Shown here: positions 36,975-47,522 of the stretch, piece by piece
Position numbering within the stretch: position 1 is the first letter of the stretch
Layout of the letters: every line of letters begins with the position of its first letter
Assembly: GCA_002269645.1 (NCBI GenBank)
Contig: NIVC01000850.1
Coordinates: 124,001 to 188,000 of the forward strand
DNA length: 64,000 nucleotides
Reading direction: 5' to 3'
DNA from: Macrostomum lignano
Lineage: Eukaryota
Notes under the pieces: model-generated
What the model saw: the letters and a program-made list of their open reading frames with translations, nothing else
The model's database searches: none
What the model was told of the DNA's origin: nothing
Translations under genes and position numbers: made by a program

Positions 36975-37995
36975 CAAGGCTTAAACAGGGAATTGCTGAG
37001 ATGCCATTGCTAACTAGCGGGGATTGCTGAAATGCCATTGGTAACTAGTGGGGATCGCTGAGATGCTAATGCTTACTAGGGGAGGATTGCTGAGATGCTA
37101 ATGCTTACTAGGGGAGGATTGCTGAGATGCTAATGCTTACTAGGGGAGGATTGCTGAGATGCTAATGCTTACTAGGGGGATTGCTGAGATGCCAATGCTA
37201 ACTAGGGGGATTGCTGAGATGCCAATGCTAACTAGGGGGATTGCTGAGATGCCAATGCTAACTAGGGGGATTGCTGAGATGCCAATGCTAACTAGGGGGA
37301 TTGCTGAGATGCCAAGTCTCACTAGGGGGGATTGCTGAGATGCCAATGCTAACTAGGGGGAATTGCTGAGATGCCAATGCTAACTAGGGGGGATTGCTGA
37401 AATGCCAAGTCTCACTAGGGGGGTTTGCTGAGATGCAAGTCTCACTAGGGGGGATTGCTGAAATGCCAAGTCTCACTAGGGGGGTTTGCTGAGATGCAAG
37501 TCTCACTAGGGGGGATTGCTGAAATGCCAAGTCTCACTAGGGGGGATTGCTGAAATGCAAGTCTCACTAGGGGGGTTTGCTGAGATGCCAAGTCTCACTA
37601 GGGGGGATTGCTGAAATGCCAAGTCTCACTAGGGGGGATTGCTGAGATGCCAAGTCTCACTAGGGGGGATTGCTGAGATGCAAGTCTCACTAGGGGGGAT
37701 TGCTGAAATGCCAAGTCTCACTAGGGGGGATTGCTGAGATGCCAAGTCTCACTAGGGGGGATTGCTGAGATGCCAATGCTAACTAGGGGGAATTGCTGAG
37801 ATGCCAATGCTCACTAGGGAGAATTGCTGAGATGCCAATGCTCACTAGGGAGAATTGCTGAGATGCCAATGCTCACTAGGGAGAATTGCTGAGATGCCAA
37901 TGCTCACTAGGGGGCATTGCTGAGATGCCAATGCTCACTAGGGAGAATTGCTGAGATGCCAATGCTCACTAGGGAGAATTGCTGAGATGCAAGTG
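36975..37995. repeat. ~30-bp minisatellite (GGGGGATTGCTGAGATGCCAATGCTAACTA)n with variant blocks
   Basis: Direct inspection; a degenerate relative occurs at 46615-46860. Confidence 0.93.
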
Positions 37996-38509: not shown

Positions 38510-39785
38510 CCTCTCTCCTATTCTCTTCTCTTTCCTCTCTTCTTCTCTCATCTCCCTTCTTTCCTCTCCTCTCCTCTCCTCTCCCTTCTCTTCTCTCCTC
38601 TCCTCTCCTCACCTCTCCTCTCCTCTCCTCTCCCTTCTTTCCTCTCCCTTCTTTCCTCTCCCTTCTTTCCTCTCCTCTCCTCTCCCTTCTTTCCTCTCCT
38701 CTCCTCTCCCTTCTTTCCTCTCCTCTCCTCTCCCTTCTTTCCTCTCCTCTCCTCACCTCTCCTCTCCTCTCCTTCTTTCCTCTCCTCTCCTCTCCCTTCT
38801 TTCCTCTCCCTTCTTTCCTCTCCTCTCCTCTCCCTTCTTTCCTCTCCCTTCTTTCCTCTCCTCTCCTCTCCCTTCTTTCCTCTCCCTTCTTTCCTCTCCT
38901 CTCCTCTCCCTTCTTTCCTCTCCCTTCTTTCCTCTCCTCTCCTCTCCCTTCTTTCCTCTCCCTTCTTTCCTCTCCTCTCCTCTCCCTTCTTTCCTCTCCC
39001 TTCTTTCCTCTCCCTTCTTTCCTCTCCTCTCCTCTCCCTTCTTTCCTCTCCCTTCTTTCCTCTCCTCTCCTCTCCCTTCTTTCCTCTCCCTTCTTTCCTC
39101 TCCTCTCCTCTCCCTTCTTTCCTCTCCCTTCTTTCCTCTCCTCTCCTCTCCCTTCTTTCCTCTCCCTTCTTTCCTCTCCTCTCCTCTCCCTTCTTTCCTC
39201 TCCCTTCTTTCCTCTCCTCTCCTCTCCCTTCTTTCCTCTCCTCTCCTCACCTCTCCTCTCCTCTCCTTCTTTCCTCTCCTCTCCTCTCCCTTCTCTTCTC
39301 TCCTCTCCTCACCTCTCCTTTCCTCTCCCTTCTTTCCTCTCCCTTCTTTCCTCTCCTCTCCCTAGGCTTCTTTCCTCTCCTCTCCTCTCCCTTCTTTCCT
39401 CTCCTCTCCTCTCCTCTCCTCTCCCTTCTTTCCTCTCCTCTCACTTCTTTCCTCTCCCTTCTTTCCTCTCCTCTTCTCTCTCTTCTTTCCTCTCCTCTCC
39501 TCTCCTCTCCCTTCTTTCCTCCCCTCTCCTCTCCCTTCTTTCCTCTCCTCTCCCTTCTTTCCTTTCCTCTCCTCTCTCTTCTTTCCTTTCCTCTCCTCTC
39601 CCTTCTTTCCTCTCCTCTCTTCTCCTCTCCCTTTTTTCCTCTCCTCTCTGTTCTTCCCTCATCTCTCATCTTCTCTCCTCTTCTCTTCATTTTCTTCTCT
39701 CCTCTTTTCTTGTTATTCGTCTTTCGTCTCTCCTTTTCTCTCCCCTTCCCTTTTCTCTTCTCTTCTCTCCTCTCCTTTCTCTCCC
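38510..39785. repeat. 1.3-kb polypyrimidine/polypurine (CCTCT/CTT) tract in PRMT3 intron 2
   Basis: Direct inspection. Confidence 0.95.
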
Positions 39786-39961
39786 CTAGCTCGCAGTCAT
39801 GCGCTAGGTTCTTCAAAGTTTGTCAACCATTGACTTAGAAACACATTTTTTACAAAACTAAAATTCTTCAAAACATACTTTTCAACAAATCAATGCTTTT
39901 TAGATGGTTTCAGATTAAAATAAAAGAGAAAAACATTTAATACTTAAAAGCTAAGACTTAC

Positions 39962-40334
39962 CTGCAGCATCTCAGCGTGTATAGATGCGCCACTGTAGCT
40001 GTCAACATAGTAGCCATCTTCATCGTCCTTCAACTCGGCAATCGTACGCGAACTGGCAGCTGGAATGACGTCATCGCTGTTTCCACCCAGAGCGAATCGT
40101 CTAAGCACGGTTGACATGCTGACAATTTGAGTTTTCAACGATTCAACTTGCAACTCTAATTCAACTATGCGCTGGTCTTTGTCAATAGCCTGACTGTTAG
40201 AGTTTGACTTGCCAGCTGCTCTGAGATCAGCGGTGGCATGCAGTCCCTGCGATTGTAGAAGTTCTTCAATGTCGACTTCGTACATCAGCGGATCGTCAAT
40301 GTCACCAACAGGCGCTGATGGCATTGTGTTGTCA
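39962..40334 (-). CDS. PRMT3: PRMT3 exon 2
   Basis: aattcag|(G)DNTMPSAPVGDIDDPLMYEVDIEELL...TIAELKDDEDGYYVDSYSGASIHAEMLQ|gtaagt; resembles PRMT3 IADLQEDEDGVYFSSY..IHEEML. Confidence 0.9.
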
Positions 40335-40702
40335 CTGAATTAACCGAAAGGCGCAAAGAGAACCTTGGTTAGTATATATCGATCTGACTATTGCGTTACA
40401 ACCCCTGGTTTGACTTTGTGAGCGGCCACGTTAGTCTAGTAAGCCTTGTGTACTAAAATTGACCCAGGGCGACAAAAACAGCCGCTGTATACACCCAGGA
40501 GTCAGCGGAATAGGCACGTAGGACGATGTCGACTTAAGAGTTGCATCGGGGTGCACACAATCCTCCTACACACTTTATGGGCAGGGATGAACGGTGAATC
40601 GAATAGGCAGCGTGAAGGGATTGTGAATGGGCTCTTCACGGGGGGGAGCGCTGATAAAAGAAGCGTCATGTAAAAAATTCATTTGGGAATTGCTACGATG
40701 TC

Positions 40703-40989
40703 GCACGCGAAGGCGTATTCAGCATGCCAGTGAAGTATGAGACAGACTAGGCCCATGGGCTAAGGTCTGCGATGCTTCACGCCTGCCCCTATCTTCAGCA
40801 GGTCAAGGCTGGTGGGAGGTCTGCACCCTCTATTTGCCTCTGGCAGCCGCAGACCCCCCCCCCACGCTGTCTCGCAAGTCGACCCAGGGTACTCGTCCCC
40901 GCGTGTGTTCAAGGCAGTCCCTAGGGCTGCTGGACAGACTGGGCTCCGGCGCTGGCGACCCTATCCAGTGGCTTCGGCCGAATTTGGGT
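40703..40989 (+). ncRNA. HDV-like self-cleaving ribozyme at the LINE 5' end
   Basis: P1 GCACGCG(40703-09)/CGCGTGT(40900-06) with G.U at position 1; P2 ACCCA(40882-86)/TGGGT(40985-89); P3 GGG/CCC with L3 TACTCGT; P1.1 AC/GT; J4/2 C40979-GAA. Confidence 0.8.
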
Positions 40990-41221
40990 ATGCGGGTCTG
41001 GCTCGCCAACCTGCAGGCCGTGGTACTGCTCAACGTACTCTCTAATGCCTAAGGTGTTGACCGTGCCGATGGGCTGGAAGGCCGGGGAGTAGTCCGGTCG
41101 CAAGCGGTCCCCCTCCTGGTGTCGGGCCAGCCTTGAGGGTGCTATTGGCCTACTGCCCGGTCAGGTGGAGCGGCCGGGTGGGTACCGCGCCCCTTTGAGG
41201 GTAGCCCACCAACCTTTTATC

Positions 41222-42742
41222 ATGGCCTTCGAGCCGACTATGGATAAACAAGCTATTTCTAGGGATGGGGACCCTTCTAAACCCCAACCTCAGTCCGAAG
41301 GACCGGCCGGCCCTGCTGGCAGATCCCAACCGACTGATTCAACTGTGGCAAAGGAAGGACCGGCTGGCTCTGCTGGCAGATCCGACCAGAGCTACCAAAC
41401 TCAAAATACCCTAAGACCTGCCAGCTCCGCTGGTGGATCTAAGGGAACCGCGAGCTCTGAGCCTAAAGGACCGGCCAAATCTGGCAGATCCGATGAAGCT
41501 CAGCGGGCTCGGCTTGAGCGCAAACGCGCTAAACAACGCGCCAAAAGGCAGGCCAAGAAGGGAGCTGCGGGGGCCAAAGCGGCGGCGTCCACCATGGATG
41601 CTGAAGCGACTGGAGTCCCAAGGCAACCAGGCGGGCCGGCCGGTGGAAGCTCCAGTAGTTCAGCGGCGGCGCTCCCTGGAGCTGCTGCCGCGGCTGCTGA
41701 GGCCGAAACCACGGCGCAACAAATGGCCACTGCCAACAAGGAGGTTCCTTCGGGAGCTACCTTTGCGGCGAAGGCCAAGGCCAAAATCCCGGGAGTGATC
41801 ATCCAAGGTCGCGACCAGGACTGGACCACTGATCAGCTTCAAAAAGTGTGGAGTGCTGTTGACTCCTATCTGATTGAGCTGACTGTCGAGGAGGGAATCT
41901 CCATCGGCGTTGAGCGGATGGTGCTGCGAAGCACATTCGTTCTTATTGCTCCTAGCAGCGAGGAGGACGCTCGGCGGCTGCTCCAGCGGCTACCGACGGT
42001 CTCCTTGGATGCTGACCTTGGCGGAGCTCTTTTTCTTCGCGAGGGCCAGCGTCCAAAGACGATACCCTATGTGGTTTTCGTCCCTGCTAAGAGCACCGCA
42101 GCTGGACCAGACGTTATTCGCCGGGTCCTACTGCGTCTGAACCCCGACCTCCCTGCTAGTGGACTGGTGTATCACCGTAAAGTCCGCAGGGGGGAGACGG
42201 GCAACTCAATTGTCCTCGGCCTTTCCAGCACTTGGGCGAGTCGGTACCCTAATGGATCCTCTTTCCAGCTGGGTGCCCTCAAGCTCAAGTTGCGCCGAGG
42301 AAAGTCTGCCAAAGGGAAGGCTACTGCCAACCCCGGCATCTCCGGCAAGAGCGGGGCGCAGTCTAAGGCCCAAGGAAAGGCGCAAGCCGATCCCAAAGCC
42401 AAAGCTGCATCTCGCCCCTCTGCTAGCAGCAGTTCGGCGACCGCGGTAACGGCTCCGGCCGAGCCCCGGGAACCAAACCTGCCAGTCGGAGAAGGAGTTG
42501 AGGACGAGGCCGGGTCTTCGGAATCCGAGCTCTCCTCGGCCACCTTGGTGGGGTCTGAAGGTAAAGATGCAGGTGAGGAAGCTTCCTCCATCCTGTCATC
42601 GGAGCCTGAGGAGTCTGCTGGGGGGCCGGTGGGGGTGAGGAGGCCATGGACGTCGACCAACTCCCATCTCCCAGTCAAGCCCCAGCGGCCTGGGACGAGG
42701 ACGATCTGTTGTCCAAGTCTCCTTGATGACCCTGGGCTCTAG
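41222..42742 (+). CDS. LINE ORF1 (basic/Ala-rich, DUF4780-like core, no CCHC knuckle), 506 aa from the first ATG
   Basis: Long open frame just upstream of ORF2; RLERKRAKQRAKRQAKK and VLLRLNPDLPASGL...IVLGL...FQLGALKLKL resemble LOA-type ORF1 (from recall). Confidence 0.75.
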   Translation: MAFEPTMDKQAISRDGDPSKPQPQSEGPAGPAGRSQPTDSTVAKEGPAGSAGRSDQSYQTQNTLRPASSAGGSKGTASSEPKGPAKSGRSDEAQRARLERKRAKQRAKRQAKKGAAGAKAAASTMDAEATGVPRQPGGPAGGSSSSSAAALPGAAAAAAEAETTAQQMATANKEVPSGATFAAKAKAKIPGVIIQGRDQDWTTDQLQKVWSAVDSYLIELTVEEGISIGVERMVLRSTFVLIAPSSEEDARRLLQRLPTVSLDADLGGALFLREGQRPKTIPYVVFVPAKSTAAGPDVIRRVLLRLNPDLPASGLVYHRKVRRGETGNSIVLGLSSTWASRYPNGSSFQLGALKLKLRRGKSAKGKATANPGISGKSGAQSKAQGKAQADPKAKAASRPSASSSSATAVTAPAEPREPNLPVGEGVEDEAGSSESELSSATLVGSEGKDAGEEASSILSSEPEESAGGPVGVRRPWTSTNSHLPVKPQRPGTRTICCPSLLDDPGL

Positions 42743-42765
42743 CCAGATATTGCATTTAATACAGT

Positions 42766-45700
42766 ATGACTAAGCTCCACGCTGCCAAAGGAGCGACATT
42801 CTGTCTGCAAATAAATTTACAGCATTGCGTATCTGCGTCAGTAAATCTGATGAAGATTGCTGAGCTGTACAGGCCAGGCCTCATCCTGATCCAGGAACCC
42901 TGGATGCGCAACGGTAAGTTGCCCAACATTCCCTCTGGCTACTCTGATTTTTATGTGTGTGGCCCGGGGAACAGCCGCCCTAGAGCGGCTATCCTCGCTG
43001 CTAGCCATCTCCAGGCTTGGCTGAGGACTGATCTCTCTGATGGAGACCTTTGCGTCATCCAATCTAATCATTTCTCTCCGCGTACGTGTCTTGTTGCCTC
43101 GGTTTATATCCCAGGCGACAGAGACCCTGCTCCCGAGAGTTTACTGCGCCTTGCGCAGTACTGCGAGTCCCAGAACGCTGAGCTGTGCTTAGGGGGCGAC
43201 CTCAACGCGCACCACAAGCACTGGGGCAGCAAAGATACCAACACTAGAGGAGAGGAGCTTCTGGCCCTCATCTCTAACACAAACCTCATGCTCTGCAACC
43301 GCGGCAGCACTCCTACCTTTAATAATGGCAGATGGACCGAGGTCCTCGACGCCACACTCGTTACCCCAAGACTCTTTGACAGAGTCAAGGAGTGGAGAGT
43401 CTGGTCTGAGGAGCCCTCCCTGTCTGACCACTGCTTTATCGCCTTTAATATCGCGGACACTAAAACCCAGTCTCCGATCACTTGGAGACGCAATATCCGC
43501 AACACTGATTGGGCGGCCTACAAGGCTGCCCTTGATCTGCACCTGCAGGAACTCACGGACTTACGTCCGATTGAGACCTGCGAGGATGTGGATCATATGG
43601 CTGAGACGCTGACAGGTTGCATTATTGCAGCCTACGAAGCGGCTTGTCCTGCTCGCGCCTACAGAGGCAAGACCTCGGCGCCGTGGTGGAACCCGGAGCT
43701 GGGGAAACTCAGGCGGAAGGCCAAAAGCCTTCATCGCCGTGCCATGAAGACCGGAAACCCGGAGGACATGGAGCTTTTCCGGCAAGCCTCCCGCAATTTC
43801 AAATCTGAAGTGCGCAAGGCCAAGGAATGTAAGTGGCGCCAATTCTGCAATGAATTGGATCAAGACAGACCTACTTCTAGGCTTGTCAAGGCCCTTACAA
43901 TGGACAAAATGTCCAAATTAGCCATGATCAAAAAAGATGATGGCTCTCTTACTAAAGACCCTGAAGAAGTGCTTCAGCATATGCTTAGCACATTCTTCCC
44001 GAGGGTACCTACTGCTAGACCGGAGCCCAACCATTCGATGGATGGAGCCACCCTAGCGGCGGGCATTGTCACTGAAGACCTAATCGCTCGTGCGGTCAGA
44101 ACCTTCAAACCCTTCAAATCTCCTGGACCTGATGGTATCTACCCTGTTCTCCTTCGTGAAGCAGCCAAGATACCCTCGTTCCTGAGACTCACCCGCAATC
44201 TTATGCGGGCCTCTATCCAGCTGGGATACGTTCCCAAAAGCTGGACTGAAGCTCGAGTAGTCTTTATTCCCAAACCTGGGAAGGGTGACTACCAAAGCGT
44301 CAAGGCCTTCCGGCCAATTAGCTTAACGTCAGCAATGCTTAAGCTCACTGAGAGGCTTATTCTCTGGCGGCTGCTCTCCTGCGAGCTGACAGCGATGCCC
44401 CTCAGCAATAATCAGCACGCCTTCCGTACCGGGAGGTCGACTGACAGCGCCCTGCATGCGATTGTCGAAAAGATTGAACGGGCGGTACTGGGTGACGGTT
44501 ACGCCCTGGCTCTCTTTCTTGACATTGTTGGCGCCTTCGACAACGTTATCTTTGAAGCGTTTCAGAGGGCCCTTCAAAATCGCAAAGCTCATGCTACCCT
44601 CATACGGTGGATCATGTACATGATCTCCAACCGTACGGACACTGCCCAACTTCTTGGGCAAACTGCCTCCACCAGAGTCTGTAAGGGTGGACCCCAAGGC
44701 GGAGTCCTCACCCCGACGCTCTGGAACCTGGTCATGGACGCTCTTCTGAGTGACTCCCGACCTGACCCCGTCTTCAAAGTCGGGTATGCTGATGACGTCA
44801 CGGCCATTGTGGCAGGACCGTCTCCCAGCACGCTCAGGGATCTGATGCAGAGCTTTATCCGCAAAGCAGAATCCTGGGCCAATGACAATGGTTTGGAACT
44901 CTCTGAGCCCAAAACCGTTGCCATTATGTTTACCAGCAGACTACGCTGGAACATACGTCCTCTGCAGCTCTACGGCAGAGATATTGCCTTCGCGCACCAG
45001 ACCAGATGTCTCGGGGTCACACTTGACCACCGGCTCAACTGGTCCTTCCACGTGAAAGCAAAAGCTAAGCGTGCCTCAGCCATCCTGGCCCAGCTCCGAC
45101 GAGCACTTGGCACTTCTTGGGGTCTATCCCCAAAGCGGCTTTGGTGGATCTATACTTCCGTAGTTAGACCTGCCATTACGTACGCCTCTGTTGTCTGGGT
45201 TAGCGCTACCCAGGTCAAAAGCCATGCAGACCTGCTCAACACGATCCAAGGCAGAGCGTGTAGGCTCATCTGCAACGCCACCAGGTCCACGCCCTTTGCT
45301 GGCATGGGGGCCTTTCTTAATCTTCCGCCTCTTGACCTCTTCATCAGGGGTGAGGCGGCTAGAACGACGCGGCGTCTAATTGATGCCGGCGTCAAATTCA
45401 TTTACATGAGAGCACCTGCTAAGCGGAACCTTGTCCCGCATAGCGATCTGTGCCTCAACTTTCTCAACGAGTGTCAGGCCAATCGCGTCTTCACCGATGG
45501 CATTGCCTCAACGCTCAACCTGAGACAGCGCTACTCCGTAGCTATCGACTCGCGCGATAACATCAATGACCATTGGAACCCTGGTGAGCTTCATTGCTAC
45601 ACCGACGGTTCTAAGCAGTCAGCCAACACCGGCTTTGGTGTTGGAATCTTTCTGAACGGGAGGGTCATCGCTACCCACGCTCAATACACTGGGGTCAACT

Positions 45701-46506
45701 CCAGTGTTTTCCAAAATGAAGTTCTGGCCATCAGCTCCTGCACTGCAGAGCTTCTCGCCACTGGCGTTACTGGTAAGAACATCATTTTCCATTCGGACAG
45801 CCAAGCTGCCTTGCACGCCATCAGTGGCTGCAGCACCAACTCTGCTACAGTCCTTGACTGTATCAAACTCCTCAATGTGTTGGGTTCCGCCAACAAAATT
45901 ACCCTTAAGTGGGTTCCGGGGCATGTGGGGATCCGAGGAAATGAGTTGGCTGACACCCTTGCAAAAGTTGGTGCCTCCGGCTCCTCTCTCGGCCCCGAAC
46001 CTCTTGTCCCGATTCCTGGCTGTGTCATCGACTCGCGCATCAAAGCGTGGATCAGGACTCAGCACCGCTCGACTTGGGCGAACCGCACGAACTGCAGGCA
46101 ATCCAGAGGCGCTGTCCCTCAGCCCTCTCACCAGCTCCGGAAGCTCCTCTTGCGCCTCTCGCGCAGAGACATCCGGGCTGCCACCATGACCCTCTCTGGT
46201 CACGGCTGCTTCTCCAGGCACCAGTACCTGCAGGGCAACGCCACCAACGCCACCTGTAGTTTCTGCAACTCAGGTGACGAAACCGCTGAGCATTTCGTCA
46301 GCATCTGTCCCGCCTTCACGCGGGCCAGACTCACTTACCTCGGGCCACACACATCTATTACTGAAGCGTGCAAACCCGAAAACTTTAATCAGCTCATGCG
46401 CTACCTTCGGGCCACCCGCAGGGCTGAACTCTCCTTTCCAGAGAGCACCATAGCTGCTGGCGACACTGGGGGACCTCCCTGGGCGGCGCCAACCCTCCGT
46501 CCATAG
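42766..46506 (+). CDS. LINE ORF2: APE endonuclease - RT - RNase H - CCHC, 1246 aa, intact
   Basis: APE QINLQH, LIQEP, GDLNAHH, LDATL, SDH; RT KSPGPDGI, FRPISL, QGGVL, YADD; RNase H YTDGS, QNE, SDSQ, GHVGIRGNELAD; CSFC...EHFVSIC. Confidence 0.96.
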   Translation: MTKLHAAKGATFCLQINLQHCVSASVNLMKIAELYRPGLILIQEPWMRNGKLPNIPSGYSDFYVCGPGNSRPRAAILAASHLQAWLRTDLSDGDLCVIQSNHFSPRTCLVASVYIPGDRDPAPESLLRLAQYCESQNAELCLGGDLNAHHKHWGSKDTNTRGEELLALISNTNLMLCNRGSTPTFNNGRWTEVLDATLVTPRLFDRVKEWRVWSEEPSLSDHCFIAFNIADTKTQSPITWRRNIRNTDWAAYKAALDLHLQELTDLRPIETCEDVDHMAETLTGCIIAAYEAACPARAYRGKTSAPWWNPELGKLRRKAKSLHRRAMKTGNPEDMELFRQASRNFKSEVRKAKECKWRQFCNELDQDRPTSRLVKALTMDKMSKLAMIKKDDGSLTKDPEEVLQHMLSTFFPRVPTARPEPNHSMDGATLAAGIVTEDLIARAVRTFKPFKSPGPDGIYPVLLREAAKIPSFLRLTRNLMRASIQLGYVPKSWTEARVVFIPKPGKGDYQSVKAFRPISLTSAMLKLTERLILWRLLSCELTAMPLSNNQHAFRTGRSTDSALHAIVEKIERAVLGDGYALALFLDIVGAFDNVIFEAFQRALQNRKAHATLIRWIMYMISNRTDTAQLLGQTASTRVCKGGPQGGVLTPTLWNLVMDALLSDSRPDPVFKVGYADDVTAIVAGPSPSTLRDLMQSFIRKAESWANDNGLELSEPKTVAIMFTSRLRWNIRPLQLYGRDIAFAHQTRCLGVTLDHRLNWSFHVKAKAKRASAILAQLRRALGTSWGLSPKRLWWIYTSVVRPAITYASVVWVSATQVKSHADLLNTIQGRACRLICNATRSTPFAGMGAFLNLPPLDLFIRGEAARTTRRLIDAGVKFIYMRAPAKRNLVPHSDLCLNFLNECQANRVFTDGIASTLNLRQRYSVAIDSRDNINDHWNPGELHCYTDGSKQSANTGFGVGIFLNGRVIATHAQYTGVNSSVFQNEVLAISSCTAELLATGVTGKNIIFHSDSQAALHAISGCSTNSATVLDCIKLLNVLGSANKITLKWVPGHVGIRGNELADTLAKVGASGSSLGPEPLVPIPGCVIDSRIKAWIRTQHRSTWANRTNCRQSRGAVPQPSHQLRKLLLRLSRRDIRAATMTLSGHGCFSRHQYLQGNATNATCSFCNSGDETAEHFVSICPAFTRARLTYLGPHTSITEACKPENFNQLMRYLRATRRAELSFPESTIAAGDTGGPPWAAPTLRP

Positions 46507-47166
46507 CGACGCGTCGGCCGTTCAGGGACTAGCGGAATGGGCGCCCGCGCCTTCCCGCTGTGTCCCCTCCGGGACAGCCCTGCAGCTAAGTCAAGTAAGT
46601 CAAGCTACGATGTCAAGGCTTGGAGGGAATCGCTATAATGCTGTAATGCTATAATGACTCTTGGGGAGAACTACTAAAATTTCAAGGCTTTACGGTTAGG
46701 GTTAAGGTTAGGGTTAGGGGGTTTCAACGTTGACAGGGGATTTTTTAGATTGCAAGGCTTATGGGGGGCATCGCTGAGATGTCAAGGGGGGTGAGTAGAA
46801 ATGTTAAGGCTTATGGGGGGAATTGCTGAGATGCAAGGCTTACATGGGGATTGTTGAGGTTATTGCAAAGAGACGTTAGATGTAGTATATTAAAAAATAT
46901 TGTACTCCCAAGTTTTCGGCTCCCCAAACGGGGGGGGGCGCTGATTGCTAGTCATCTCTCACGGACTTAGCAAGTGCTGAATTTTGAATTTATTATATAA
47001 TAAATTGGCCAAATTCTGTATGCGTTGAATTTCAATATTGCTGGATTTTCTGAAAGTATCGGCAATTCGGAATTTGTCAATAATGATAATACAACTATAT
47101 TTTTAAGAGACTTGATGCAACTACACTACTAACCACACCTACAGAATCAGTAGTATAAAAACTCAC

Positions 47167-47522
47167 CCACTGCCATCCTGAACGGCACCAGCTGTTACTC
47201 GAAACTCGTCCAACAGCTGTTGGAGCCTACCATCCTCAGTTGTTGTTGCATTGAAATTCTTACTACGAACAAAAGCCACAAACTGTACCCAGGTGGGCTG
47301 ATCCTGCACACCAATGCTGACTAATAAACTGGCAAAATTGGCAATACCATGAGCAGCTGGCAAATGTTTATTGATTAAATCATCCAAATCAACTGAAGCT
47401 TGGTTGCGACAGAAAAGACACTGGAGACGAGACTGTCCTATGCTCATGTCAGTGTCTCCATCATTAGCTAGCTCAACATAATCATCATCATTATCATCGC
47501 TATCACTGCCGCAGTTATTCAT
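47167..47522 (-). CDS. PRMT3: PRMT3 exon 1 (acidic N-terminus + C2H2 zinc finger)
   Basis: MNNCGSDSDDNDDDY...CLFC...KHLPAAH...WVQFVAFVRSKN...G-GG|gtgagt; phase 2 joins exon 2; spliced CDS is 547 aa. Confidence 0.88.

What the first reader, a model, noticed from the sequence alone, without database searches (positions are those of the whole stretch)
40703..40989. HDV-like ribozyme whose cleavage site coincides with the first base of an intact LINE
Seen: all five helices of the nested double pseudoknot can be drawn. P1 GCACGCG/CGCGUGU has a G1.U wobble; P2 is ACCCA/UGGGU; P3 is GGG/CCC around L3 UACUCGU (U and G in the U20/G25 positions). P1.1 is a compensated AC/GU instead of CC/GG, followed by UCAA as in genomic HDV J1.1/4, a branched P4, and C-GAA before P2. 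J1/2 is a ~170-nt insert with its own hairpins (GTGAAGTAT/ATGCTTCAC, GGTCTGC/GCAGACC). G1 is exactly the base after the 5' TSD, which is independent support. Established: HDV-like ribozymes define 5' ends of R2, RTE, L1Tc and some LOA elements. Inference: this element is released from read-through transcripts by self-cleavage; I know of no description of it in this lineage.
Basis: partly seen in the sequence, partly recalled or inferred. Interest (0 to 1): 0.85.

Follow-up and report, generated by a model that had tools for sequence, protein, structure and literature searches.

The report
HDV-like ribozyme capping a flatworm LINE
The first ~290 bases of an intact jumping gene (LINE) in a Macrostomum flatworm genome very probably fold into a self-cutting HDV-like ribozyme that would trim the element's RNA exactly to its first base, a trick already known from other LINE families, so this is a well-supported new example and not a new principle.

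Summary
The motif alone is not significant: a loose HDV descriptor expects about 0.6 matches per window. The evidence is position and comparison.

- **Closest relative (L001, ORF2 57% identical):** its contig starts exactly at the homologous G1. It keeps P1, P1.1 and P3 through four fully compensatory pair changes, a wobble-to-Watson-Crick change and a matched 1-bp shortening, with no broken pair.
- **J1/2 insert:** the 172 nt form a conserved, closed multi-hairpin domain.
- **J4/2:** the C-(G/U)-A-A segment is conserved.
- **Distant relatives:** four LINEs (about 35% ORF2 identity) carry HDV-like ribozymes with 52-160-nt J1/2 inserts at the same place.

P2 and P4 are less certain.

Verdict: a probable self-cleaving ribozyme and a new member of a known kind, alongside the R2, RTE, Baggins and L1Tc 5' ribozymes. 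No cleavage was tested. Interest is moderate (0.4), not 0.85.

The parts
40693..40702 (+). 5' copy of the target-site duplication CTACGATGTC. The predicted cut lies between 40702 (C, the -1 base) and 40703.
   Evidence: identical 10-mer at 46605-46614
40703..40709 (+). P1 5' strand GCACGCG. G40703 is both G1 and the first base of the LINE.
   Evidence: 7 bp with 40900-40906, with G.U at the cleavage site. L001 has GCCUGC/GCAGGC: two double compensatory changes, G.U to G-C, and a coordinated loss of pair 7.
40710..40881 (+). J1/2 peripheral domain, 172 nt. It has a closing stem (40713-15/40873-75 and 40720-23/40866-69) and hairpins at 40730-38/40772-80 (with an inner hairpin around 40743-40766), about 40781-40801, and 40818-24/40849-55. 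Short A-rich linkers join it to P1 and P2.
   Evidence: the same closed multi-hairpin fold in the window and L001; 34 shared pairs, 7 with changes on both sides. Precedent for a structured J1/2: PMC4908430, PMC3774820.
40882..40886 (+). P2 5' strand ACCCA, directly abutting P3
   Evidence: It pairs with 40985-89. Competing partners are 40940-43 and 40994-98.
40887..40899 (+). P3 (GGG/CCC) around L3 UACUCGU. A40891 and C40892 form P1.1. G40895 is the conserved L3 G.
   Evidence: L001 has GGG-UCUCCGU-CCC. The L3 G is reported as important in R2 ribozymes (PMC3774820).
40900..40908 (+). P1 3' strand CGCGUGU (40900-06) and P1.1 3' strand GU (40907-08)
   Evidence: P1.1 is A-U/C-G in the window and C-G/U-A in L001, so both pairs changed on both sides.
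40909..40978 (+). J1.1/4 (UCAA) and the P4 region. Hairpin 40913-40931 is flanked by U40909-A40934 and C40910-G40933. Further hairpins follow, ending in GGC-UUCG-GCC at 40970-79. There is no single closing helix.
   Evidence: Stability is not above shuffles. The homologous region of L001 forms two stable hairpins (z -3.9), and that of L002 one long helix (z -5.8).
40979..40984 (+). J4/2 CGAAUU with the candidate catalytic C40979. C40978 is the alternative.
   Evidence: aligns with L001 C270-UAA-ACC. Relatives have GC-UAA-AU (L002), GC-CAA-A (L012), GC-UAA-AC (L043) and GC-GAA-AU (L074). A catalytic C plus a constrained A is the conserved J4/2 feature in R2 (PMC3774820).
40985..40989 (+). P2 3' strand UGGGU, the 3' edge of the minimal ribozyme
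41000..41003 (+). Possible distal extension of P2: GGCU pairs with A40877-C40880
   Evidence: The homologous helix in L001 is A163-C167 with G285-U289. Both strands are conserved but there is no double change.
41222..42742 (+). ORF1, 506 aa from the ATG (an in-frame GTG lies at 41165). It matches no Pfam family.
   Evidence: It is 32% identical to L001 ORF1. ORF1 of more distant relatives carries DUF4780.
42766..46506 (+). ORF2, 1246 aa, uninterrupted: AP endonuclease, reverse transcriptase, RNase H and a C-terminal Cys/His motif
46587..46604 (+). 3' terminus of the element: two tandem TAAGTCAAG units and no poly(A)
   Evidence: L001 ends in one similar unit.
46605..46614 (+). 3' copy of the target-site duplication

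Best explanation
Window 40703-46604 is a young, intact non-LTR retrotransposon (AP endonuclease, RT and RNase H) in a Macrostomum lignano-type genome.

Its first ~287 nt (40703-40989, perhaps stabilised by pairing up to 41003) encode an HDV-like self-cleaving ribozyme.
- P1 pairs the first seven bases of the element with 40900-06, directly after the P3/L3 hairpin.
- L3 bases 40891-92 pair with 40907-08 (P1.1).
- ACCCA/UGGGU forms P2.
- A C in J4/2 (40979, or 40978) would act as the general acid/base.
- The 172-nt J1/2 insert is a self-contained, closed multi-hairpin domain that holds P1 and P2 together, like the P1.2 domain of the Agam-2 ribozymes.

When a copy is transcribed from any upstream promoter, the RNA would cut itself 5' of G40703. 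This discards the host sequence and leaves a 5'-OH RNA that starts at the element's first base, the template for full-length retrotransposition.

Shown here: the anatomy, the position, the covariation and the recurrence in relatives. Inferred: catalysis, the identity of the catalytic C, the exact P2/P4, and co-transcription as the RNA source.
For: 1. All helices are present as described.
2. G1 is the first base after a perfect 10-bp TSD. The per-position chance of the motif is about 5e-6, derived.
3. L001 was retrieved through ORF2 homology alone (57% aa identity).
   - Its contig begins exactly at the homologous G1.
   - P1 shows A-U to C-G, C-G to U-A and G.U to G-C, and both strands are 1 nt shorter.
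   - In P1.1 both pairs changed on both sides.
   - P3 and the L3 U and G are kept, and no pair is broken, although this segment is only about 62% identical.
4. The J1/2 domain folds alike in both elements, with 7 compensatory pairs.
5. J4/2 C-(G/U)-A-A plus the following GGGUA is conserved between the window and L001.
6. Four distant relatives carry HDV-like ribozymes at their 5' ends, with 52-160-nt J1/2 inserts, 6-10-bp P2 and GC-NAA J4/2.
   - L012, L043 and L074 lie 1.8-2.0 kb upstream of ORF2.
   - A high-stringency scan gave 3 sense loci against 1 weaker antisense locus in 556 kb.
   - A match as good as L002's arose in 5 of 3000 shuffles.
7. Published precedent:
   - 5' HDV-like ribozymes in R2, R4, Dong, Baggins, L1Tc and RTE (PMC3774820, PMC6765202, PMC3185411).
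   - P1-to-P1' distances of 23 to over 700 nt, and variable or absent P4, in R2 (PMC3774820).
   - Activation of the ribozyme by a structured J1/2 (PMC4908430).
Against: - No cleavage data of any kind.
- No Rfam family matches here or in the relatives. The models cannot span such inserts or pseudoknots, so this is weak evidence.
- P2 is only 5 bp. The homologous P2 of L001 is poor: 2 Watson-Crick and 2 G.U pairs, with a 4-nt spacer before P3.
- Two other P2 registers compete in the window: 40940-43(+40947-50), and 40994-98 continuing to 41003.
- The P4 region is not a closed helix and is no more stable than shuffles.
- C40979 can pair with G40970 in a UUCG hairpin.
- Only one close relative was available, so covariation rests on two sequences.
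- Most distant relatives with enough upstream DNA (about 25-30 loci) gave no canonical hit.
- A transcription start at G1 would explain the TSD coincidence and the L001 contig start equally well.
Confidence: 0.7

Rival explanations
1. It is a real HDV-like ribozyme with the core as described, but the 3' half differs from the reader's drawing. One option: P2 is formed with 40940-43 (plus 40878-81/40947-50), P4 is only hairpin 40913-31 and J4/2 is CAGAC. Another option: P2 is G40881-C40885 with G40994-C40998, continuing into 40877-80/41000-03. The catalytic C would then not be 40979, or J4/2 would be much longer.
For: - In L001 the helix homologous to the first option is by far the best P2: C170-A175 with U232-G237, plus G165-G168 with C241-C244, all Watson-Crick. 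One C-G to U-A change separates it from the window.
- The second option is the most stable duplex in the window (-16.8 kcal/mol).
Against: - The first option has no C-N-A-A before P2' in L001 (UGC or CUGC). Its 3' strand also lies inside a stable 11-bp local hairpin of L001.
- The second option needs a 15-nt J4/2.
Confidence: 0.15
2. It is a conserved structured 5' UTR without catalysis. The long-range 5'-end pairing and the J1/2 domain would serve as an internal promoter, an RNA-packaging or ORF-protein binding site, or a translation element. The 5' end would be set by transcription initiation at G1. The HDV likeness would be a relic or a convergence.
For: - The best-conserved stretch of the UTR is inside J1/2, not in the catalytic core.
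- The TSD and the L001 contig start fit a transcription start at G1 equally well.
- L1Tc shows that one 5' sequence can be both promoter and ribozyme (PMC3383444).
- The weak P2/P4 in the window and in L001.
Against: - P1.1 is a 2-bp pseudoknot specific to the HDV fold. It is kept by double changes in both pairs and is present as CC/GG in four relatives.
- The L3 U and G and the C-N-A-A J4/2 are kept.
- A mere closing helix would not need P3/L3 placed exactly before P1'.
Confidence: 0.12
3. It is a chance match of a permissive motif in GC-rich sequence.
For: The loose descriptor expects 0.59 hits per window. Core-level hits are at the chance level, 12 observed against 11.4 expected.
Against: - G1 falls exactly on the independently defined element start.
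- A relative found without the descriptor shows compensatory changes.
- In shuffles of the local 400 nt, a strict hit anywhere arose in only 9 of 3000.
Confidence: 0.02

Closest known systems
R2 (and R4, Dong) 5' HDV-like ribozymes (Eickbush and Eickbush; PMC3774820)
   Same: An HDV-like double pseudoknot at the 5' end of a non-LTR element processes it from a co-transcript. P1 is 6-7 bp and P2 at least 5 bp, often imperfect. J1/2 runs from tens to over 700 nt. P4 is variable or absent. Little sequence is conserved beyond the catalytic C and a few core bases.
   Different: R2 is a single-ORF, restriction-like-endonuclease, rDNA-specific element, and it often cleaves upstream in the 28S sequence. 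Here the element has two ORFs with APE, RT and RNase H, inserts outside rDNA, and would cleave exactly at its first base. Here the J1/2 is conserved and closed between relatives, whereas the silkmoth J1/2 loops share only small regions of identity.
drz-Agam-2 type large HDV-like ribozymes with a structured J1/2 (P1.2) domain (PMC4908430)
   Same: A stable base-paired peripheral domain sits between P1 and P2, joined by short linkers. A possible extended P2 is present. The published work shows that such a domain speeds cleavage by bringing P1 and P2 together.
   Different: Here the domain is larger (172 nt) and multi-branched, and P2 is short in the window. No kinetic data exist.
Baggins (LOA clade, by my own knowledge of Repbase classification) and L1Tc/ingi 5' ribozymes (PMC6765202, PMC3185411, PMC4035085)
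   Same: These are APE-type LINEs with RNase H in which an HDV-like ribozyme defines the 5' end at +1. In L1Tc the same sequence is also a promoter.
   Different: L1TcRz is compact (77 nt) with a short J1/2. I did not test whether the window's element belongs to the LOA, I, Nimb or another RNase H-bearing clade. The best solved-structure match of its endonuclease is TRAS1 of the R1 clade.
Twister-variant ribozymes of Schistosoma mansoni non-LTR elements (PMC8501958)
   Same: A flatworm LINE uses a small self-cleaving ribozyme in its retrotransposition cycle.
   Different: It is a different ribozyme class (twister, not HDV-like), a different LINE group and a different host order.

Membership tests
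HDV-like self-cleaving ribozymes | P1 of 6-7 bp whose 5' strand starts at the cleavage site and whose 3' strand directly follows P3' | tested here: met
   7 bp, 40703-09 with 40900-06. Kept in L001 through 2 double changes, 1 wobble change and a coordinated 1-bp shortening.
HDV-like self-cleaving ribozymes | P1.1: two pairs between L3 and the bases just 3' of P1', forming the second pseudoknot | tested here: met
   A40891-U40908 and C40892-G40907. L001 has C180-G196 and U181-A195, so both pairs changed on both sides. Four distant relatives have CC/GG.
HDV-like self-cleaving ribozymes | 3-bp P3 closing an L3 of about 7 nt with the conserved U at its start and G near its end | tested here: met
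   GGG-UACUCGU-CCC. L001 has UCUCCGU. Relatives have UCCACGU, UCCACGUU and GCCUAGU. The importance of the L3 G is reported in PMC3774820.
HDV-like self-cleaving ribozymes | P2 of at least 5 bp, with the 5' strand abutting P3 and the 3' strand at the 3' end after J4/2 | tested here: inconclusive
   Met literally in the window (5 Watson-Crick bp). The homologous pairing in L001 is weak and offset by 4 nt, and two competing registers exist. It is clear in L002, L043 and L074 (10 bp) and in L012 (6 bp).
HDV-like self-cleaving ribozymes | An unpaired catalytic C in J4/2, followed by a constrained A | tested here: met
   At sequence level only. C40979 (or C40978)-G-A-A aligns with C270-U-A-A of L001 and with GC-NAA in four relatives.
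HDV-like self-cleaving ribozymes | P4 helix between J1.1/4 and J4/2 (variable, and dispensable in some members) | tested here: inconclusive
   the window region forms hairpins without a closing helix (z +0.8). L001 forms two stable hairpins and L002 one long helix. PMC3774820 reports P4 absent in silkmoth R2.
HDV-like self-cleaving ribozymes | Site-specific, divalent-metal-dependent self-scission giving a 5'-OH at G1 | not testable with these tools
   Needs transcription and cleavage assays.
HDV-like self-cleaving ribozymes (Rfam covariance models) | A match to a curated Rfam HDV-type model | tested here: not met
   no HDV-type hit up to E = 10 (window 40500-41200) and E = 1 (five relatives). 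The models carry neither the pseudoknots nor a 50-170-nt J1/2 insert, so this says little.
Retrotransposon 5'-processing ribozymes (R2, RTE, Baggins, L1Tc type) | The ribozyme sits at the element's 5' terminus and the predicted cut equals the 5' end of full-length insertions | tested here: met
   The TSD ends at 40702. The L001 contig starts at the homologous G1. Only one insertion with both flanks was available.
Retrotransposon 5'-processing ribozymes (R2, RTE, Baggins, L1Tc type) | The element is expressed as part of a longer co-transcript | not testable with these tools
   No transcript data. Whether the element also has an internal promoter is unknown.
RNase H-bearing APE LINEs (I, LOA, Nimb, Ingi, R1-like group) | Two ORFs, with ORF2 = APE + RT + RNase H + a C-terminal Cys/His motif | tested here: met
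   Pfam; TRAS1 endonuclease is the best match among solved structures. The exact clade was not tested because no reference LINE set was on hand.

The most novel reading that the evidence does not exclude
The conserved 172-nt J1/2 domain and the three mutually exclusive partners for the ACCC(A) strand (40940-43, 40985-89 and 40994-98) form a co-transcriptional switch. In this reading the J1/2 module also serves as an internal promoter or as the binding site of the element's own protein. It would decide whether the ribozyme folds and cuts, so that cleavage is regulated and not constitutive. This would be a promoter-ribozyme dual system like Pr77/L1TcRz, but built from a large peripheral domain.
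Probability: 0.12. Interest if true: 0.6.

Novelty: new member of a known kind. Interest (0 to 1): 0.4.

Why it matters
It extends 5' HDV-like processing ribozymes to an active-looking two-ORF LINE family of Macrostomum, a flatworm used as a laboratory model. It also shows that the same layout, with a long structured J1/2, recurs in several distant relatives found in environmental assemblies. Together these add to the evidence that many LINEs rely on host read-through transcription plus self-cleavage.

It offers a natural test case for how large peripheral domains tune HDV-like ribozymes. It gives annotators a precise marker for the 5' ends of this family.

It contrasts with schistosome LINEs, which use twister variants.

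It does not change the established picture of how such ribozymes work.

Tried and rejected
- **Rfam:** gathering and permissive searches found nothing relevant in the window or in five relatives.
- **More close relatives for covariation:**
  - ORF1 protein searches returned only chimeric M. lignano gene models, or nothing.
  - Exact look-ups of the window's ORF1 and ORF2 found no record.
  - P0001's contig had no DNA available and lacks the UTR.
  - L004 lacks the UTR.
  - A 25-base J1/2 pattern found nothing in JGI metagenomes.
  - The ORF2-profile scan returned only relatives of 30-38% identity.
- **Other copies in the window:** none by blastn or tblastn.
- **First MAFFT alignment:** it misaligned L3 and put L001's J4/2 segment into a gap. 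A direct pairwise alignment corrected this.
- **'Model B' P2 (40940-43):** considered seriously and now ranked second.
- **Very relaxed descriptor:** useless, with 297 sense against 202 antisense hits.
- **L003, L005, L006, L007:** no convincing ribozyme.
- **Flanking minus-strand ORFs:** my guess that they are exons of a methyltransferase-like host gene was not confirmed by Pfam or PDB searches.
- **LINE clade:** not assigned, because no reference set was available. A literature search on DUF4780 gave nothing useful.
- **Ruminski 2011 and Webb 2009 papers:** not held.

Full report
**1. What is there**

Window 40703-46604 (+) is a complete non-LTR retrotransposon.
- It is flanked by a perfect 10-bp target-site duplication, CTACGATGTC, at 40693-40702 and 46605-46614.
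- The 5' UTR is 519 nt.
- ORF1 runs 41222-42742 and matches no Pfam family.
- ORF2 runs 42766-46506, is uninterrupted and encodes 1246 aa. It carries AP-endonuclease, reverse-transcriptase and RNase H domains and a C-terminal Cys/His motif.
- Among solved structures, the endonuclease is closest to that of TRAS1.
- The 3' end is two TAAGTCAAG units and has no poly(A).
- UniRef gene models of Macrostomum lignano contain fragments 96-98% identical to ORF1 and ORF2. The host is therefore that flatworm or a very close relative, and the family has several near-identical copies.
- No other copy or fragment lies in the window.

**2. The observation**

- P1: 40703-09 with 40900-06, with G.U at the cleavage site.
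- P2: 40882-86 with 40985-89.
- P3: 40887-89 with 40897-99, around L3 UACUCGU.
- P1.1: 40891-92 with 40907-08, followed by UCAA.
- C40979-GAA-UU lies just before the P2 3' strand.
- The two named J1/2 hairpins are at 40730-38/40772-80 and 40818-24/40849-55.
- G40703 is the base after the TSD.

**3. Chance**

I wrote a descriptor of the HDV-like fold with these terms:
- P1 of 6-7 bp starting with G;
- P3 of 3 bp and L3 of 7 nt;
- P1.1 of 2 Watson-Crick pairs;
- P2 of at least 5 bp abutting P3;
- C-N-R-A before P2';
- J1/2 up to 250 nt and P4 up to 120 nt.

Results:
- Shuffles that preserve local dinucleotide content give 0.59 hits per window, and 40% of them have at least one.
- The core alone is at chance level, 12 hits against 11.4 expected.
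- So a motif with this much freedom is not evidence by itself.
- What is improbable is the position. A chance hit with G1 on one named base has a probability of about 5e-6.
- In shuffles of the local 400 nt, a strict hit anywhere arose in only 9 of 3000.

**4. The closest relative (L001)**

An ORF2 search found a Logan contig (L001; ORF2 57% and ORF1 32% identical) that carries a whole element plus about 530 nt of 3' flank.
- Its first base is the homologue of G40703. It was found by protein similarity, so it is an independent test.
- P1 is GCCUGC with GCAGGC. Against the window, pair 1 goes from G.U to G-C, pair 3 from A-U to C-G and pair 4 from C-G to U-A. Pair 7 is lost on both strands at once.
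- P1.1 is C-G/U-A in place of A-U/C-G, so both pairs changed on both sides.
- P3 (GGG/CCC) and the first U and sixth G of L3 (UCUCCGU) are kept.
- No pair is broken, although this stretch is only about 62% identical.
- Four double compensatory changes in long-range and pseudoknot pairs are hard to explain without selection for this fold. P1.1 in particular is specific to the HDV-type double pseudoknot.

**5. The J1/2 insert**

- In both elements it folds into the same closed domain: a closing stem next to P1 and P2, and three hairpin arms.
- On the pairwise alignment, 34 pairs are shared and 7 have changes on both sides.
- Short A-rich linkers join it to P1 and P2.
- This is the layout that Webb et al. 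showed to activate Agam-2 ribozymes by bringing P1 and P2 together (PMC4908430).
- In R2 ribozymes P1 and P1' are 23 to over 700 nt apart (PMC3774820). The size of the insert is therefore not an objection.

**6. The 3' half is less secure**

- MAFFT first hid the homology. A direct alignment shows that window GUGGCUUCGGCCGAAUUUGGGUAUGCGGGUCUGGCUCGCC matches L001 GUUGCUUAGG-CUAAACCGGGUA-CCGGG-CUUGCCCG. The J4/2 C-(G/U)-A-A and the following GGGUA are therefore conserved.
A distal helix, A163-C167 with G285-U289, has a counterpart in the window (40877-80 with 41000-03).
- L001 has a much better helix with an upstream strand, C170-A175 with U232-G237 plus G165-G168 with C241-C244. The window has a weaker homologue, 40883-86 with 40940-43 plus 40878-81 with 40947-50. 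That strand is not preceded by C-N-A-A in L001, and it lies inside a stable 11-bp hairpin.
- A third register in the window, 40881-85 with 40994-98, is the most stable duplex but would make J4/2 15 nt long.
- The P4 region of the window is a run of hairpins with no closing helix and no excess stability (z +0.8). L001 has two stable hairpins and then C270.

**7. Distant relatives settle part of this**

| Locus | G1 | P1 | P1.1 | P3 / L3 | J4/2 | P2 | J1/2 | Other |
|---|---|---|---|---|---|---|---|---|
| L002 (ENA contig) | 116 | GGGCUGC / GCAGCCU | CC/GG | P3 4 bp; L3 enlarged | GC-UAA-AU | 10 bp | 52 nt | One long closed P4 (z -5.8); the P2' strand contains the ORF1 ATG |
| L012 (JGI contig) | 45 | GGUGAUC / GAUCACU | CC/GG | L3 UCCACGUU | GC-CAA-A | 6 bp | 160 nt | about 2.0 kb upstream of ORF2 |
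| L043 (JGI contig) | 3203 | G7 / C7 | CC/GG | L3 GCCUAGU | GC-UAA-AC | 10 bp | about 103 nt | about 1.8 kb upstream of ORF2 |
| L074 (JGI contig) | 706 | GGGCGCG / CGCGCCC | CC/GG | L3 UCCACGU | GC-GAA-AU | 10 bp | 150 nt | about 1.85 kb upstream of ORF2 |

(Sources.)

- A match as good as L002's arose in 5 of 3000 shuffles.
- A high-stringency scan of all 556 kb held gave these three JGI loci on the sense strand, against one weaker locus on the antisense strand.
- In all four, GC-NAA directly precedes a P2' that abuts P3.
- Because the window reads G40977-C40978-C40979-G-A-A, the catalytic C could be 40978 instead of 40979. Both should be mutated.
- Most of the other 25-30 loci with enough upstream DNA gave no canonical hit. 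Either the ribozyme is not universal in the group or it departs from my descriptor, as the window, L001 and L002 each do in one respect.

**8. Mechanism**

- By analogy with R2, R4, Dong, Baggins, L1Tc and RTE (PMC3774820, PMC6765202, PMC3185411, PMC4035085), the RNA would cleave 5' of G40703 when a copy is transcribed from an upstream promoter.
- This would yield an RNA that starts at the element's first base.
- Anatomy, position, covariation and recurrence are shown here. Catalysis, the catalytic residue and the source of transcription are inferred.
- A transcription start at G1 would explain the TSD coincidence and the L001 contig start equally well. It would not explain the P1.1 covariation or the conserved J4/2.

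**9. Comparison and novelty**

- The feature meets the structural definition of an HDV-like ribozyme for P1, P1.1, P3/L3 and the J4/2 C. It is inconclusive for P2 and P4, and activity is untested.
- It matches no Rfam model. Those models cannot span such inserts.
- Its role is the known one of 5' processing of LINE RNA.
- I found no paper that mentions both Macrostomum and ribozymes. The schistosome LINEs studied so far use twister variants (PMC8501958).
- It is therefore a new member of a known kind. It is well supported computationally and useful for annotation and for studying peripheral-domain control, but it is not a surprise for specialists. Interest 0.4.

**10.

I did not compare the motif letter by letter with the ribozymes of hepatitis delta virus itself. 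That would have meant writing a human virus's sequence from memory. L001, L043 and the other relatives have GCAA, UAAC, UUAA and UAAA at that place.

Noticed in passing
window 36988-37990, and 40650-40702 plus 46615-46870: A 31-bp satellite (unit GGGGATTGCTGAGATGCCAATGCTCACTAGG, 32.5 copies, 93% matches) lies 2.7 kb upstream. The LINE's insertion site (GGGAATTGCTACGATGTC|AAGGCTT) and its 3' flank are degenerate copies of the same repeat. Whether the element prefers this satellite is unknown; L001's 3' flank is unrelated.
   Followed up: partly
window 46690-46719: Five telomere-type TTAGGG units sit inside the degenerate satellite just 3' of the LINE.
   Followed up: no
window 38512-39782: A polypyrimidine (CT-rich) tandem array of about 1.3 kb, with periods of 5, 24 and 38 nt and strong strand skew. 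It accounts for the spurious Arg/Glu/Lys-rich ORFs on the minus strand.
   Followed up: partly
window 39944-40324 (-) and 47163-47522 (-): Two minus-strand ORFs flank the LINE and look like exons of a host gene. If so, the LINE sits antisense in its intron, and that gene could not supply sense read-through transcripts. Pfam and PDB searches gave no significant match, so this is unconfirmed.
   Followed up: partly
L002 116-312; L012 45-288; L043 3203-3398; L074 706-944: Four distant LINE relatives from environmental assemblies carry HDV-like ribozymes with 52-160-nt J1/2 inserts at their 5' ends. None matches an Rfam model. In L002 the L3 loop is enlarged to 15-17 nt by a small CC-UUAA-GG hairpin, and the ORF1 start codon (309-311) lies inside the P2 3' strand.
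   Followed up: partly
L003 759-1916, L006 927-2582, L007 1619-3400 (weakly L004 1-1161): ORF1 of several relatives carries Pfam DUF4780, a domain without assigned function. ORF1 of the window and of L001 does not reach it. DUF4780 may therefore simply be the ORF1 core of this LINE group.
   Followed up: no
window 41090-41105, 41140-41160 and 41170-41185; L001 450-470 and 520-555: Downstream of the ribozyme, the 5' UTR holds further blocks conserved between the window and L001: a CCGGGGAGUANUCCGG hairpin, UUGGCYUACUGCC and GGUGGGUAC just before ORF1. Their function is unknown.
   Followed up: no
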